Origin: Pavona decussata
Taxonomy: Eukaryota
Assembly (NCBI GenBank): GCA_977016875.1
Contig: CDRNST010000070.1
Span: forward strand, 62,001 to 126,000
DNA: 64,000 nucleotides
Direction of reading: 5' to 3'
Below, in pieces: positions 8,735-13,002 of the stretch. Numbering within the stretch: position 1 is the stretch's first letter; every line of letters begins with the position of its first letter. Both the position numbers and the translations under genes were made by a program. Below the pieces are notes generated by a model that was not told the origin of the DNA, ran no database searches, and worked only from the letters and a program-made list of their open reading frames with translations.

Positions 8735-11700
8735 ATGATGACAATCAGTAGTATTTTTGTTACTTTGCTATTGGCTACGTTGACCGACGCCGGAAACTTT
8801 AAAAGCAGGAAAACAAATGAGAACTATAAAGATGTTCTTTGTAATGCTACTTTGAACTTGCGTGGTTCAAGTAGCAGTGATTATTCGGATCAAGGAGATG
8901 TCTCTTCAAATACAAGAAACAACTTTATGAGTTTGACATCTATCAAGCACAATTATTTTTTACCGGAAACTCATCGTGATAAACCTGTAAGGCCTTCTGG
9001 GTGCCCTCCATGCCGTAAGTTTTACTTAAACTGCTTATAGTACGATTTAACTAGTCTTCGACGCTACGGACAACAATATTTTACAAGAGCGAATCAGCAG
9101 TCCTAGAATGTTTCCTGGCATTGCTCTTTCACGTATAATTTACGTAGGTTTGTGCAACCCTAAAGAGGTATGATTTGAAATAGGGTGCGCCTTTGCTAAT
9201 GGTCTGAAATACACTATTTTTGTAAAATATCTGCCTAGCCATGTGGATTGGCTAGTAACTGAACGGCGTATAGTGTTCTATAAAAACAGTTTTCATTGCA
9301 CCTCGGCAATTTCATGTACGTGTATATGCTCGGCTACATCTGCGAGGAATAATTACGGGTAAATCACGTTAAGATAAGTCTTCTCTGGTTTTTCAGTTTT
9401 TCCTAAAGTGATAATTTGCTTGCTTTTTCAACAGTTTAATTGCAGTTGAGTGATGATCCATCCATAAAAACTATTGATTAATCGTTGGAATAAATAATTG
9501 TTTGTCCATTTGTTTCACAAATTTATGTTTTATTATGTTCTGGTTTTAGCTCTACTTGGAAAGCCTGGTCCATGTAAGTTTATTGGTTTAATACATGTAT
9601 ATTGCATGGCTTAAAGGACCTCTATTCAGCAGCTTTCAACAAAAATGCACTATGTAAATTAAGNNNNNNNNNNNNNNNNNNNNNNNNNNNNNNNNNNNNN
9701 NNNNNNNNNNNNNNNNNNNNNNNNNNNNNNNNNNNNNNNNNNNNNNNNNNNNNNNNNNNNNNNNNNNNNNNNNNNNNNNNNNNNNNNNNNNNNNNNNNNN
9801 NNNNNNNNNNNNNNNNNNNNNNNNNNNNNNNNNNNNNNNNNNNNNNNNNNNNNNNNNNNNNNNNNNNNNNNNACAGAGCAGGTAGAAGTTTCTATGTGTG
9901 TTTTGTTTTAATCAAACATTTTAGTAAAGACTCAGTTTAAAATGCTTATAACAAAGGACTGGCTTTAGCTTTTATCCACTCAGTCTATTAACTTACCATT
10001 TCCATTAATTACTATGTCTATCGTGGCAGTTCAGGTTTTGATTTTTTATGTTTCAGTTTGTTTTGCTCCTATGGATTTGGGATTTGTAGAGGAGTCCTCA
10101 GCCAGCGTGGAAAAACATGCAAAAGGAAACTTTAAAAGGCTTCTTGACTTTGTTGAATGGACAATACGAAAATTTTCAGTTTCGTCAACAAAAACACGAG
10201 TTAGTTTGATAACCTGTGGCTTTAAAACTGATCTGGTATTTAATTTTGAAAAGTAAATACTATTATTAAGAATTTGTCTCAGCTGAGACCAAATGTTGAT
10301 TTTGCCTCAGATGGCCTTCTCCATTATTGACGAAGGCATGGTTGCGTCGCCTTATCTTTTTGCCTTTATTACACCATGACATTATACCCTCATTTTAACA
10401 GTTGTGTTGGCCCACAAGGAGGGACTTGTTCGGAAACTTATTTGCTGGTAGTATTTAATTAAATGAGATCAATGGTTCCAGGGAAATGTTGCAATTACTG
10501 ATATGTCACAAAACAAGGTTTAGCTTGTATCTATTTGGTTTGACTGCGTATATAAAGACAGACCACACTCATTCACTGGGTAATCTGTCTTGTTTCCGTT
10601 TTACTCTGATGGTTCCATGAGACGTACAACCGGACAAACTAAACTTTGATTTTCAAGAGTACATTTCAAACAGAAAGAGTCCCTGAATTGGATGGAAAAT
10701 AAATTCATCTCATAAAAAGACTTGCCAGGACTCATGCTTTTTTACTCATTTCAGTCCACAGTCAAGGTCTTCTGTTATCCGCTCTCTCCGGAAAGCCTCA
10801 ACACAGAGCTTAACCAGTTCCAATACCGGTTTTGCTCTAAGTATGGCTGGGTACCACTTATTTCGCCAACAACCTTCCATCGCAGGCTCTCGTAAAGATG
10901 TACCTAAGGTTTTAGTGGTCATCACGGATGGTAGGTATGTACGACATTCAGTAAGAACGTTATGTTATCACATTAATCGCTTTCAGCCTGGGGTCTTTTT
11001 ATTTTGTCTATTGGTTAGCAAGAGGAAGAAGGGAGATCTGACGTACTCTCTTTCGTACTCGTCCACTGACCCGATGATCAATATTTATCAGTTTAATCAC
11101 GGATAATTCATCAGCTATTACTTCATAAATCATTACAAGGATAACTTCATTTCGTAATAAACTGAGTTGTAATTCACAGAAGTACGCTAACACCAACATG
11201 TGCTCATCAAGTTAAAAACTCTTTTCATGGATTTGCGGCAGATCGCTACAAAACTACACGTTTCTGCTAAAATCTGAAGGGGGAGTAAATAAACAGCTTA
11301 TGAACTGTTTGATCTGACATATATTTGTCTGGAAAACCATAAATATGCTAAGTTTAAGGAACTGGGAATTTTTTAGTTTGCATGAATTTCTATAAGATCG
11401 CGTTTCAGTTCTTCTGTATATGAATTCTTATATCGGCTGGGATGGTAAGATTACTAGCTTACCTCTTCTAACTTTTTCCAAGCTCTCATTCGTGTTGGAA
11501 ATGTGCTTTACTGCCAGAATAACTATTGCAGCATGATGTTTCAGATCAACTGACAGTGTCAATGGGCCTGCATTCAAAATCAAACAGAGTGGCGTGCGGA
11601 TTTACAGCGTAGGAGTTGGAAATTACTTTGACATAAAACAACTTGAAACAATGGCTTCTAGACCGGTCAGTGAAAATGTGTTCATCGGTCCTTTTAACAA

Positions 11701-13002
11701 GCTACAGTATATCAGAGATGCCCTCGTCAGGAGTGTCTGCTATGGTAGGTTTATAATTGTTGTAATTATACGACAAAGCAGTTGCAAAATTACAGTCCTC
11801 TGACCCTTCCTGAAACAATGGTCAGATCCTACATCGTAGGTTTGGAGAAAAGAAAATTTAGCGAAATTAAAATTGATATTCAGCATATATACTACCTGTA
11901 CTACCGTAAAAACTGACTTAACTCCGCTATTATACAAATTTCCATTGAATAACCTCGCAATCTTTGCCTAATCTCGTCTCCTCGATATAGATGTGTTGTT
12001 ATCAACGTAAATGTTGTTTAGTCGGTTGAATGAAGTTTCAACAACACGTTACGCATGCTTGCTAGTGCAAGCCGCTGGCAATAAAAGCAATTTTTCCCCA
12101 CGCTTCTTCCTTCTTATTCATTGCGGAGTTTGAACTTTCTCTTAGCCGGTCCAACCACCCTTATGGATTTTCTTTAACGTAAAATGCCATATAGGACGTT
12201 TCAAAATAGAAAATTCCCTCGGGAGATTCGCACCTAAACGAAACGGTAATTACCCCACGAGGAAGACCACAGGAAATCTTACCCTTCGTTGGATAGTACA
12301 CGTCGGGCGAATCATCCGACTTTGTAAAACATGCACAACTTCAGAAACCACACAAACCCCAAGCGAAACAATTGTAGGTCACATGGTCACCACACCCATT
12401 TTTCGTATAAGTTTTCCCCAACTTCGTTCGTTTGTTTTGTTTTGTTTTTTTATCTTAGGAATTGGTGGTTTCTTGAAAAAGCCTGGAAATAAACAATGCC
12501 TCTGCAAACAAGGAAGTAAAAAGCCAGGTAAGCCTATCCGTAAGTTTTACTGATAAATGAACTCCTCACTGTTTCAAGGAAACCTACTCTCCTGAAATAA
12601 GTTAACGTTGAATTGTTAAAAAAATCTTATTTCAAATTTCCTTGGAAACTGAAATTGAATTTCATGACTTAATACGGTTGCTCAGTTGTTTCAGACAAAA
12701 CAACTTCTGCTTACTGAATATAGCGGCAACCGTATGACGTCATGAAATCCAAAATGGCGGCGCGCGGGAAATTTTGAAGCGAAAATGGGCGATAATCATA
12801 CCGAACTTTTAGCACACTTGAATTTTCAAACTAAAATTAAGAATTTAGACATTATATATTTCAAACAATTTAACGTCAATTTGCTGTTAGAGTGGAGGTT
12901 CCCTTTAAAGTTTAAGTCAACAAAAATTTTATATAAATGGTATAGCTTTGTTAACATAGTCTTTAATCTGATCTCTTTTTAGGTTTTAACTCCGACGTTT
13001 AA
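8735..13002 (+). CDS. Secreted single-vWA-domain protein (~322 aa), paralog of the head of the downstream giant gene
   Basis: Exons 8735-9014, 9550-9573, 10057-10252, 10755-10934, 11545-11744, 12459-12527, 12983-13002 have GT-AG sites and compatible phases (969 nt). Signal MMTISSIFVTLLLATLTDA; vWA motifs DLGFVEESSAS, TRVSLIT, KVLVVITDG, IYSVGVG. The gap at 9664-9872 could hide an exon; the last exon is less certain. Confidence 0.78.
12573..12908. mobile_element. Degenerate TIR element (Kolobok-like MITE)
   Basis: Imperfect ~45-bp terminal inverted repeats (aaggaaacctactct / agagtggaggttccct) with TTAA at the right end. Confidence 0.45.

What the first reader, a model, noticed from the sequence alone, without database searches (positions are those of the whole stretch)
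8735..13002. Small tandem paralog copying only the head module of the giant protein
Seen: both genes run signal peptide, low-complexity segment, exon ending CPxC|gtaagt (CPPC vs CPVC), a 24/27-nt Lys/Pro micro-exon, a related vWA (SASVEKHAKGNFKRLLDFV vs SASVERYGVGNFRRLIDFV) and a 69-nt G.GG-x9-CLC exon. The small gene stops there, and its MIDAS Asp is replaced (ESSAS). Inference: a two-gene system in which the small protein is a disulfide-linked partner, cap or chain terminator for the giant protein.
Basis: partly seen in the sequence, partly recalled or inferred. Interest (0 to 1): 0.72.

Follow-up and report, generated by a model that had tools for sequence, protein, structure and literature searches.

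The report
Ancient head-only vWA gene beside giant
A small stony-coral gene encodes a secreted one-domain protein built, exon for exon, like the front end of the giant matrix protein next door; it is spliced, under selection and shared with sea anemones, but whether the two proteins ever join is untested.

Summary
Window 8735-13002 (+) is a seven-exon gene for a 322-aa secreted basic protein. Its parts are a signal peptide, an S/N-rich stretch ending CPPC, a 24-nt K/P micro-exon, one vWA domain in three exons, a 69-nt GxGG-x9-CLC exon and a 20-nt last exon with the stop.

The neighbouring giant vWA/Laminin_G_3 gene starts at 17168 with the same module: CPVC with the same phase-1 donor, a 27-nt micro-exon, V1, and a 69-nt exon. 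A third gene on another contig (C318) has it too.

The assembly gap lies in intron 2. The reading phase fits across it, and the Oculina and Actinia orthologs have no extra residues there.

One contig of the same species joins E6 to E7 at GT..AG, so the small gene ends on its own exon. dN/dS against the Oculina patagonica ortholog is 0.21, and 0.03 in the CLC exon. The small-then-giant order recurs in Oculina and in a third assembly.

In a tree the small-protein vWAs (coral, Oculina, Actinia) are sister to the giants' head vWAs, so the split is ancient, not a recent copy. Glu replaces the MIDAS Asp in every ortholog seen.

The "disulfide partner or cap" idea stays untested. Earlier scan notes cover only this stretch and the giant (s1-492653).

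The parts
8735..9014 (+). Small gene exon 1: start codon, signal peptide (MMTISSIFVTLLLATLTDA), S/N-rich poorly conserved stretch with one N-glycosylation site (NAT), IKHNYF motif, CPPC. The donor is gtaagt, phase 1.
   Evidence: It is 45% identical to Oculina exon 1, with dN/dS 0.27. It is single-copy in the own genome.
9550..9573 (+). Small gene exon 2: 24-nt Lys/Pro micro-exon (PLLGKPGP), phase 1 to phase 1.
   Evidence: Oculina has a 24-nt exon and Actinia a 27-nt exon at the same place.
9664..9872 (.). Assembly gap (N), inside intron 2 of the small gene.
   Evidence: The reading phase and ortholog colinearity argue that no coding exon is hidden here. The gap was not bridged or filled.
10057..10252 (+). 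Small gene exon 3: the first third of the vWA domain, with the N-terminal Cys and the E-S-S-A-S site where a MIDAS would read D-x-S-x-S.
   Evidence: Pfam VWA profile positions 1-54. It is 69% identical to Oculina. The intron after it sits at the same residue and phase as the intron in the C318 head vWA.
10755..10934 (+). Small gene exon 4: the middle third of the vWA domain (SSNTGFAL, VLVVITDG).
   Evidence: Pfam VWA positions 59-113, E 4e-7. It is 68% identical to Oculina. The donor AG|gtatgt was chosen because the ortholog reads ITDGRSTD.
11545..11744 (+). Small gene exon 5: the last third of the vWA domain, ending at the C-terminal Cys (SVCY|G).
   Evidence: Pfam VWA positions 115-162. It is 80% identical to Oculina, with dN/dS 0.08. 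X13 contigs stop matching the genome at 11745.
12459..12527 (+). Small gene exon 6: 69 nt reading GIGGFLKKPGNKQCLCKQGSKKP. It is a basic tail with the CxC pair, 14 residues after the last vWA Cys.
   Evidence: 21 of 22 residues are identical to Oculina, with dN/dS 0.03.
12686..12910 (.). Dispersed repeat in the last intron. It is not part of the coding model.
   Evidence: Summed contig depth reaches thousands in all four runs, with many joints and loose ends.
12983..13268 (+). Small gene exon 7: the last 5 codons and the TAA stop (13000-13002), then 3' UTR at least to 13268.
   Evidence: X13 contig 11 joins 12527 to 12983 (GT..AG) and runs to 13268. The tail (F/C)NSDV is shared with Oculina, which reads on 11 more residues.
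17168..17307 (+). Giant gene exon 1: start codon and signal peptide.
   Evidence: It matches the N-terminus of the Oculina 3625-aa gene model.
22721..23205 (+). Giant gene exon 2: acidic low-complexity stretch ending RCPVC. The donor is gtaagt, phase 1.
   Evidence: It is 58% identical to Oculina, including the identical PPRPKLVTPFRGRCPVC. Its pI is 4.5.
24583..24609 (+). Giant gene 27-nt Lys/Pro micro-exon (PTLKPTKPM).
24964..25527 (+). Giant gene V1: the head-type vWA domain in one exon, with an intact D-G-S-A-S.
   Evidence: Pfam VWA E 9e-35. It is 38.5% identical to the small vWA over 192 residues. It falls in the head clade in the tree.
27214..27282 (+). Giant gene 69-nt exon reading GTGGNLVPATRRICLCPITGPIT.

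Best explanation
The stretch is an independent, old gene. It encodes a 322-aa secreted, basic (pI about 9.7) protein that consists only of the "head module" found at the N-terminus of a family of giant coral matrix proteins. The module is CPxC, an 8-10 residue Lys/Pro linker, a head-type vWA domain, then x-x-G-G and, 14 residues after the last vWA Cys, CxC.

Shown here:
- the exon model and its own terminal exon;
- purifying selection, strongest on the last vWA exon and the CLC exon;
- orthologs with the same introns in Oculina and in the sea anemone Actinia;
- the same small-then-giant order in two other coral assemblies;
- Glu in place of the first MIDAS Asp in all orthologs seen.

Inferred, not shown: the small gene and the giants' heads descend from one ancestral head gene that existed before stony corals and sea anemones parted. 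The giants arose by joining such a head to vWA/Laminin_G_3 repeats through phase-1 exons, or the small gene is an early truncated copy.

Inferred mechanism: the N- and C-ends of a vWA domain lie side by side. The four conserved extra cysteines (CPxC and CxC) therefore form one cysteine cluster at the base of the domain. I think it most likely that this cluster makes bonds between chains, in the way of an antibody-hinge CPPC or the CxC of matrilins. The head would then be an assembly module. A head without a body would pair with itself or with a giant's head, and in the latter case would occupy an assembly site without extending the network. My odds are about 0.9 for the gene-level account, about 0.45 for inter-chain bonding, and about 0.2 for pairing with the neighbouring giant in particular.
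For: - Exon model and shared architecture.
- vWA domain: Pfam VWA on the three exon pieces.
- Splicing: E6-to-E7 GT..AG joint and 3' UTR in an X13 contig, and X13 contigs ending at the E5 donor.
- Orthologs: P0012 (Oculina, 323 aa) and P0025 (Actinia, 282 aa) have the same motifs and the same intron positions, including TGC C|gtaagt and a 24/27-nt micro-exon. Many exon-sized fragments from other coral assemblies are 72-96% identical to Oculina, and those read show VEASAS.
- Selection: dN/dS 0.21 overall, 0.08 in E5 and 0.03 in E6, with dS about 1.
- Synteny: in Oculina the giant (3625 aa, VWA and Laminin_G_3) starts 3.5 kb downstream on the same strand. In ERZ26692694 the small-gene exon 3 and giant V1 lie 19.8 kb apart on one contig.
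- Third head-bearing gene at C318, sharing the small gene's first vWA intron.
- Tree: head clade 96/94, small clade with Actinia 100/98, giant-head clade 99/95, internal vWAs 99/98.
- Charge: basic in all three species.
Against: - No experiment or computation here shows any disulfide, dimer or contact. The structure tool returns no coordinates, so Cys-Cys distances could not be read.
- The RNA evidence is a few low-depth contigs (depth 3-8) of runs whose RNA label is a guess. One X15 contig (10645-10847) runs unspliced across the E4 acceptor. X1 and X2 contigs are colinear with introns at about 93% identity, which looks like DNA or pre-mRNA of a related coral.
- The Actinia ortholog has a proline dehydrogenase gene, not a giant, downstream.
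- The C318 head-bearing gene has a transporter-like gene upstream, not a small gene.
- The order of duplications is not firm. Forcing the small clade together with the neighbour's V1 type costs 8.4 log-likelihood units, AU p = 0.088.
- The four cysteines may pair within one chain.
Confidence: 0.6

Rival explanations
1. Intramolecular clasp. CPxC and CxC bond to each other within one chain (or hold a metal ion), stapling the two tails at the base of the vWA domain. The small protein is then a monomeric soluble vWA ligand-binder that works on its own. Its place next to the giant is only a relic of an old tandem duplication.
For: - A vWA domain brings its two ends together (established knowledge of the fold), so the two motifs are near each other in one chain.
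- The spacings are strictly kept: 8-10 residues before the domain and exactly 14 after it, in four genes or species. That suits a fixed intramolecular geometry.
- Actinia keeps the small gene without a giant downstream.
- The conserved extra-domain cysteines number four, an even count, in all orthologs.
Against: - A rigid Pro-flanked CPPC is the classic inter-chain motif of antibody hinges (from memory, not tested).
- The same cysteine set at the head of very long multi-domain proteins, one of them followed by collagen-like (GGP)n exons, fits an assembly role.
- Neither point is a test.
Confidence: 0.35
2. Recent tandem copy. The small gene was copied from the head of this particular neighbour after the giant genes had diverged from each other, as the title "copying only the head module" suggests.
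For: - The two genes are adjacent on the same strand.
- The AU test does not reject a clade of small proteins plus the neighbour's V1 type (p = 0.088).
Against: - The best tree puts the small clade outside both giant-head types (99/95), and the Actinia protein falls inside the small clade (100/98).
- The small vWA is only 38.5% identical to V1, while the two giant heads are 57% identical to each other.
- The small gene's two vWA introns are shared with Actinia, and one of them is also shared with the C318 head. V1 has neither.
Confidence: 0.1
3. One gene, two heads. Exons E1-E6 are an alternative promoter and first-exon cassette of the giant gene, spliced from 12527 to the giant's first Laminin_G_3 exon. 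Both junctions are phase 1.
For: Phase compatibility of E6 with the exon after the giant's 69-nt exon. The two genes are on the same strand and close together.
Against: - The only joint seen at 12527 goes to 12983 and into a stop codon and UTR.
- The Oculina annotation separates the genes and keeps a homologous short tail.
- The Actinia gene ends inside the CLC exon.
Confidence: 0.03
4. Decaying or silent duplicate (pseudogene).
For: - Glu replaces the MIDAS Asp.
- The stop comes 11 codons earlier than in Oculina.
- RNA depth is low.
Against: - The frame is open through seven exons with canonical splice sites.
- dN/dS is 0.21, and 0.03 in E6, at dS about 1.
- The Glu itself is conserved from corals to Actinia.
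- A spliced contig exists.
Confidence: 0.02

Closest known systems
Collagen VI chains (short alpha1/alpha2 and giant multi-vWA alpha3)
   Same: Short and very long paralogous vWA-bearing matrix chains share one module, and in collagen VI they assemble into one disulfide-bonded unit (from knowledge, not tested here). Two of the short-chain genes lie in tandem.
   Different: No Gly-X-Y triple helix was found in the small gene or in the part of the giant inside the window. Only the C318 paralog has (GGP)n exons. The shared module here is N-terminal. No assembly has been shown.
Matrilins (vWA, then CxC, then coiled coil)
   Same: A vWA domain closed by its own N/C cysteine pair is followed shortly by a C-x-C pair that in matrilin-1 makes the inter-chain bonds (recalled from the literature, a lead only).
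   Different: Pfam reported no EGF module or any other family on the exons scanned, and coiled coils were not searched for. A second cysteine pair (CPxC) sits in front of the domain. The first MIDAS residue is Glu.
Antibody hinge CPPC / CPSC
   Same: A Pro-flanked C-P-P-C (CSPC in Oculina) sits in a Pro/Lys-rich linker. In IgG this motif makes parallel bonds between two identical chains (from knowledge).
   Different: There is no homology, only a motif-level resemblance. Bonding here is unknown.
VWA2 / AMACO (the name NCBI's pipeline gave the Actinia ortholog)
   Same: A secreted protein with a vWA domain.
   Different: As recalled, AMACO has several vWA domains with a cysteine-rich and EGF-like part. 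This protein has one vWA and no other Pfam domain. The name is an automatic best-hit label, not a membership.
FACIT collagens XII/XIV (vWA plus TSPN, a LamG-like fold)
   Same: The giant's alternating vWA and Laminin_G_3 domains and the C318 paralog's collagen-like exons recall the vWA/TSPN arms of FACIT collagens.
   Different: No FN3 domains turned up in the exons scanned or among the Pfam families listed for the Oculina giant. No collagenous domain was found in the giant within the window. The small gene has neither.

Membership tests
von Willebrand factor type A domain (Pfam PF00092) | Match to the VWA profile over the whole domain | tested here: met
   The three exon pieces cover profile positions 1-54, 59-113 and 115-162 of 174 (E 2e-4, 4e-7, 5e-5; 22, 30.8 and 23.9 bits against a cut-off of 23.8 for a whole protein). 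The full-length orthologs P0012 and P0025 carry PF00092 precomputed.
von Willebrand factor type A domain (Pfam PF00092) | Complete MIDAS metal site (D-x-S-x-S, a Thr, and the D of TDG) | tested here: not met
   The first residue is Glu (E-S-S-A-S). Oculina reads E-A-S-A-S and Actinia E-S-S-S-N. The two Ser and the Asp of ITDG are kept, and Ser stands at the Thr position (for the giant's domains). Whether Glu still supports metal binding is unknown.
Head module of the giant vWA/Laminin_G_3 genes of this genome | CPxC at the end of an exon, with one extra C before a gtaagt donor (phase 1) | tested here: met
   Small gene at 9002-9014, giant at 23193-23205, and C318 at L030:1584. Oculina and Actinia show the same.
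Head module of the giant vWA/Laminin_G_3 genes of this genome | A 21-27 nt Lys/Pro micro-exon, phase 1 to 1, between CPxC and the vWA | tested here: met
   24 nt in the small gene, 27 nt in the giant, 21 nt in C318, 24 nt in Oculina small and 27 nt in Actinia small.
Head module of the giant vWA/Laminin_G_3 genes of this genome | The vWA belongs to the head-type clade, apart from the internal vWAs | tested here: met
   Careful ML tree of 46 domains: head clade 96/94, internal clade 99/98.
Head module of the giant vWA/Laminin_G_3 genes of this genome | A short exon with x-x-G-G and CxC exactly 14 residues after the last vWA Cys | tested here: met
   69 nt in the small gene and in the giant. 81 nt in C318 with the same 14-residue spacing. 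Actinia has the same spacing.
Head module of the giant vWA/Laminin_G_3 genes of this genome | A body of Laminin_G_3 and vWA repeats after the head | tested here: not met
   The small gene ends 5 codons after the CLC exon. This is what makes it head-only.
VWA2 / AMACO | Several vWA domains with cysteine-rich and EGF-like modules | tested here: not met
   One vWA and no other Pfam family on any exon. Its length is 322 aa.
   No multimer prediction or coordinates are on hand, and there are no proteomic data.
   They are kept together in Oculina and in a close relative. They are not seen together in Actinia within 10 kb downstream, and the contig ends 3.8 kb upstream.

The most novel reading that the evidence does not exclude
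The head module (CPxC, vWA, CxC) is a covalent head-to-head assembly device of a cnidarian family of giant polycationic matrix proteins. The conserved head-only protein would then be its natural monovalent competitor: a secreted cap that sets the length or cross-link density of the giant-protein network. Hexacorals would have kept it for more than half a billion years for that purpose.
Probability: 0.15. Interest if true: 0.7.

Novelty: new member of a known kind. Interest (0 to 1): 0.42.

Why it matters
Short "head-only" relatives of very long matrix proteins are a simple way to regulate polymer assembly. Cnidarian matrix biology has few defined assembly modules.

This work defines a compact, strictly spaced module: four cysteines bracketing a vWA domain whose metal site carries Glu. 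The module is shared by one small and at least two giant genes, is conserved from sea anemones to stony corals, and has conserved gene order in corals. That gives a concrete pair of proteins in which to test how such giant, highly charged coral matrix proteins are put together.

If the cysteines turn out to bond only within one chain, the finding reduces to an ordinary old paralog. That paralog is already predicted, as a hypothetical protein, in public annotations.

Tried and rejected
- Own-genome searches with E1 and E4 found only the gene itself, so there is no second small gene.
- Own-genome searches with E3 and E5 found the C318 head as the best match, ahead of V1. That led to the third family member.
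- Alignment A2, which included E1, was dropped because MAFFT scattered the low-complexity exon. A3 was used instead.
- The word search with profile A3 found only two full-length proteins (Oculina, Actinia) plus exon-sized genomic fragments. No Nematostella or Exaiptasia ortholog appeared. That is not proof of absence.
- The fragments from Logan and ENA all read on into introns, so they are genomic and give no expression evidence.
- Three literature searches found no description of the small protein or of a vWA/Laminin_G_3 giant.
- Structure prediction was not run. The tool returns no coordinates, so it could not settle whether the cysteines bond within or between chains.
- The exhaustive representative search was not run. 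The operators called it costly, and no claim here rests on an absence of relatives.
- The joined step was left out of every database search. The spliced small-gene model was never sent to a database tool as one joined protein. Database searches used exon references or alignments of exon references.
- A joined translation built from window coordinates was used only inside local scripts, for comparison with the window and fetched loci, the trees, and pI.
- The N gaps were neither filled nor looked up.
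Full report
**What is there**

The window is eukaryotic DNA: 36-45% G+C, with GT..AG introns. It is contig C70:62001-126000 of a 602-Mb genome. Public runs label that genome as a coral ("organism A"; related contigs come from a coral metatranscriptome).

On the + strand, 8735-13002 reads as seven exons with canonical splice sites and one open frame of 322 codons:
- E1 8735-9014
- E2 9550-9573
- E3 10057-10252
- E4 10755-10934
- E5 11545-11744
- E6 12459-12527
- E7 12983-13002, with TAA at 13000-13002

The product has these parts, in order:
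- a signal peptide;
- a 70-residue S/N-rich stretch;
- CPPC;
- a Lys/Pro linker (PLLGKPGP) encoded by the 24-nt E2;
- one vWA domain spread over E3-E5, matching Pfam VWA profile positions 1-54, 59-113 and 115-162;
- the peptide GIGGFLKKPGNKQCLCKQGSKKP, encoded by the 69-nt E6;
- five more residues.

**The assembly gap**

The N run 9664-9872 lies wholly inside intron 2. It starts 90 nt after the E2 donor and ends 184 nt before the E3 acceptor.
- E2 ends in phase 1 and E3 supplies the two missing bases (T|TT, Phe), so the frame is kept.
- In the Oculina and Actinia orthologs the micro-exon is followed directly by the vWA exon, with no extra residues.

No coding exon is therefore expected in the gap. 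I could not test physical continuity, because the one read-laying run had been used and the alignments stop at the Ns.

The giant gene runs as follows:
- It starts at 17168 with a signal-peptide exon (17168-17307). This matches the N-terminus of the Oculina 3625-aa model and agrees with the earlier scan note s1-492653.
- Exon 2 (22721-23205) is an acidic stretch ending TGT CCT GTT TGT C|gtaagt. That is the same codon phase and donor as TGC CCT CCA TGC C|gtaagt in the small gene.
- A 27-nt Lys/Pro micro-exon follows (24583-24609).
- Then comes the vWA domain V1 in a single exon (24964-25527).
- Then a 69-nt exon reads GTGGNLVPATRRICLCPITGPIT (27214-27282).
- After that the giant alternates Laminin_G_3 and vWA domains to the end of the window.

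The small vWA is 38.5% identical to V1 over 192 residues (E 6e-37), which is better than to any internal vWA of the giant.

1. The giant's signal peptide is on a separate exon.
2. The two "low-complexity" stretches are unlike in make-up (pI 4.5 against 8.9).
3. The small vWA has two introns that V1 lacks.

**The head is a family trait**

Own-genome searches, done exon by exon, show a very large vWA expansion: more than 108 matches to V1.
- They found no second copy of E1 or E4.
- They found one further gene, at C318:3.435-3.456 Mb, with the same head:
  - a signal-peptide exon;
  - an acidic stretch ending CPPC|gtaagt;
  - a 21-nt micro-exon (PKPTKAQ);
  - a vWA 57% identical to V1;
  - an 81-nt exon with SAGG-x9-CVC.
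- That gene continues with collagen-like (GGP)n exons and then vWA and Laminin_G_3 domains.
- Its head vWA has one intron. It sits at the same residue and phase as the E3|E4 intron of the small gene.
- The distance from the last vWA Cys to CxC is 14 residues in all three genes and in the Actinia protein.

**Is the small gene real and separate?**

Reads:
- A 377-nt contig of run X13 (same species label) covers 12462-12525. It then skips 455 bases with GT..AG ends to 12981-13268. This is the predicted E6-E7 junction followed by the stop and a 3' UTR.
- Two further X13 contigs stop matching at 11745, the E5 donor.
- These are low-depth contigs (3-8) and the RNA label of X13 is a guess. A precise GT..AG skip at predicted exon ends nevertheless points to spliced RNA.
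- An X15 contig (10645-10847) runs unspliced over the E4 acceptor.
- X1 and X2 contigs follow exons and introns alike at about 93% identity. That looks like DNA or pre-mRNA of a related coral and gives no evidence of splicing.

Orthologs:
- A profile of exon references (A1) found P0012, a 323-aa hypothetical protein of Oculina patagonica.
- It also found P0025, a 282-aa protein of the sea anemone Actinia tenebrosa, labelled "VWA2-like".
- Both have the full plan:
  - CSPC or CPPC;
  - the linkers PPLRKPGP or PYRKGPKAP;
  - E-A-S-A-S or E-S-S-S-N at the MIDAS position;
  - GVGG-x9-CLC.
- Both have the same intron positions, including the two vWA introns.
- Actinia ends three codons after CLC. 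Oculina has a 16-residue last exon homologous to E7.
- A second profile search (A3) found many exon-sized fragments from other coral assemblies, 72-96% identical to Oculina. Those read show VEASAS. All are genomic.

Selection against Oculina:

| Exon | Identity | dN/dS |
|---|---|---|
| E1 | 45% | 0.27 |
| E3 | 69% | 0.29 |
| E4 | 68% | 0.21 |
| E5 | 80% | 0.08 |
| E6 | 95% | 0.03 |
| Overall | – | 0.21 (dS about 1.0) |

The gene is under purifying selection, strongest on the last vWA exon and on the CLC peptide.

**Synteny**

- In Oculina the small gene is followed 3.5 kb downstream, on the same strand, by a 3625-aa VWA/Laminin_G_3 gene. Its exon 2 ends in the identical PPRPKLVTPFRGRCPVC.
- In a third assembly (ERZ26692694, V1 93% identical to the window), small-gene exon 3 and giant V1 lie 19.8 kb apart on one contig.
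- In Actinia the next gene downstream is a proline dehydrogenase. The contig ends 3.8 kb upstream.
- The C318 gene has a transporter-like gene upstream, not a small gene.

**Phylogeny**

I built a careful ML tree of 46 vWA domains. The rows were the window's domains, own-genome paralogs and database hits. Near-identical rows and two very long rows were left out.

| Clade | Support |
|---|---|
| Head-type clade | 96/94 |
| Small proteins (window, Oculina, Actinia), within the head clade | 100/98 |
| Giant heads (neighbour type plus C318 type), within the head clade | 99/95 |
| Internal vWAs, a separate clade | 99/98 |

- The small lineage is at least as old as the split between stony corals and sea anemones. 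In the best tree it is older than the split between the two giant-head types.
- The order of duplications is not firm. Forcing the small clade together with the neighbour's V1 type costs 8.4 log-likelihood units, AU p = 0.088.
- The direction is also open: either a head was added to a repeat body, or an early copy was truncated.

**How it may work**

Shown: a secreted, basic (pI 9.5-10.4 in three species), single-vWA protein with Glu at the first MIDAS position. It has four conserved cysteines outside the domain's own pair, at fixed distances before and after it.

From the known vWA fold, the two chain ends meet at the base of the domain. CPxC and CxC therefore form one cysteine cluster.

Two readings remain, and nothing here separates them:
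- **Bonds between chains.** This would resemble an antibody-hinge CPPC or the CxC of matrilins; both comparisons are recalled, not tested. The head would be an assembly module. The head-only protein would be a self-pairing unit, or a monovalent occupant of a giant's assembly site.
- **An intramolecular double staple.** The small protein would then be an independent soluble binder.

I put the first at about 0.45 and the second at about 0.35. Within the first, pairing with the neighbouring giant in particular is at about 0.2. Conserved gene order in corals favours a link. The Actinia locus and the lone C318 gene argue that the link is not obligatory.

**Known or new**

The gene is already predicted in public annotations, as a hypothetical protein in Oculina and with an automatic VWA2-like label in Actinia. 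It is not a VWA2/AMACO member, since it has one vWA and no EGF.

I found no paper on it or on the vWA/Laminin_G_3 giants.

New here are the recognition of a strictly spaced head module shared by one small and two giant genes, its age, and the conserved gene order. I file it as a new member of a known kind: a truncated paralog of a multidomain vWA matrix protein. The cap idea is an open possibility with moderate interest.

**Limits**

- The spliced model was searched exon by exon or as alignments of exon references. The joined protein was used only in local scripts, and the joined database step was left out.
- Co-expression, disulfide pattern and multimer structure were not testable with these tools.

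Noticed in passing
window 20643-20996 (+): An open frame with a borderline WSC domain (Pfam 27.6 bits against a cut-off of 27.8) lies inside intron 1 of the giant gene. The Oculina giant lists no WSC before its first vWA. It may be a separate small gene, an unannotated exon or a relic.
   Followed up: no
window 21353-22105: A second assembly gap (21353-21575) runs straight into a 530-bp simple repeat that reads as (GS)n or poly-Val, depending on frame. GC skew there is +0.27. The gap was probably caused by the repeat.
   Followed up: no
window 18623-19879 (+): A 419-codon open frame with no Pfam hit lies in giant intron 1. Its second half resembles sequences common in cnidarian retroelements (a recalled resemblance, not tested), so it may be a transposon remnant.
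   Followed up: no
window 12686-12910: A short dispersed repeat in the last intron of the small gene. Summed contig depth reaches thousands in all four runs, with many different flanks, so it is abundant and present in RNA libraries.
   Followed up: partly
G000:C318:3435000-3456000 (L029-L031): A paralogous giant gene with the same head, followed by about ten exons of (GGP)n collagen-like repeats separated by KPTKPT-type linkers, and then vWA and Laminin_G_3 domains. A CxC pair directly in front of a possible triple helix would fit a chain-registering knot.
   Followed up: partly
window 24964-25527 compared with 10057-11744 and L030:3032-4017: Intron pattern of the head vWA: two introns in the small gene (both shared with Actinia), one in the C318 head (the same site and phase as the first of these), and none in the neighbouring giant's V1. 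This implies intron loss in the giant lineages or very old gains.
   Followed up: partly
G000:C70 up to about 196.5 kb, beyond the window: vWA matches continue on the same strand for at least 70 kb past the window end. Several there are closer to V1 than the giant's own internal domains. This is either one very long gene or a tandem series.
   Followed up: no
window 32000-37500: No giant-gene exon turned up between V2 (about 31.3 kb) and the next Laminin_G_3 exon (about 38.0 kb). The + strand open frames there look unrelated, and a 60-residue stretch is repeated at 32138 and 36400. This is likely a transposon insertion in a long intron.
   Followed up: no
window 12528-12545: A second in-phase donor (ATCC|gtaagt) lies 18 nt after the E6 donor and would add GKPIR(K). 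The one spliced contig seen uses 12527.
   Followed up: partly
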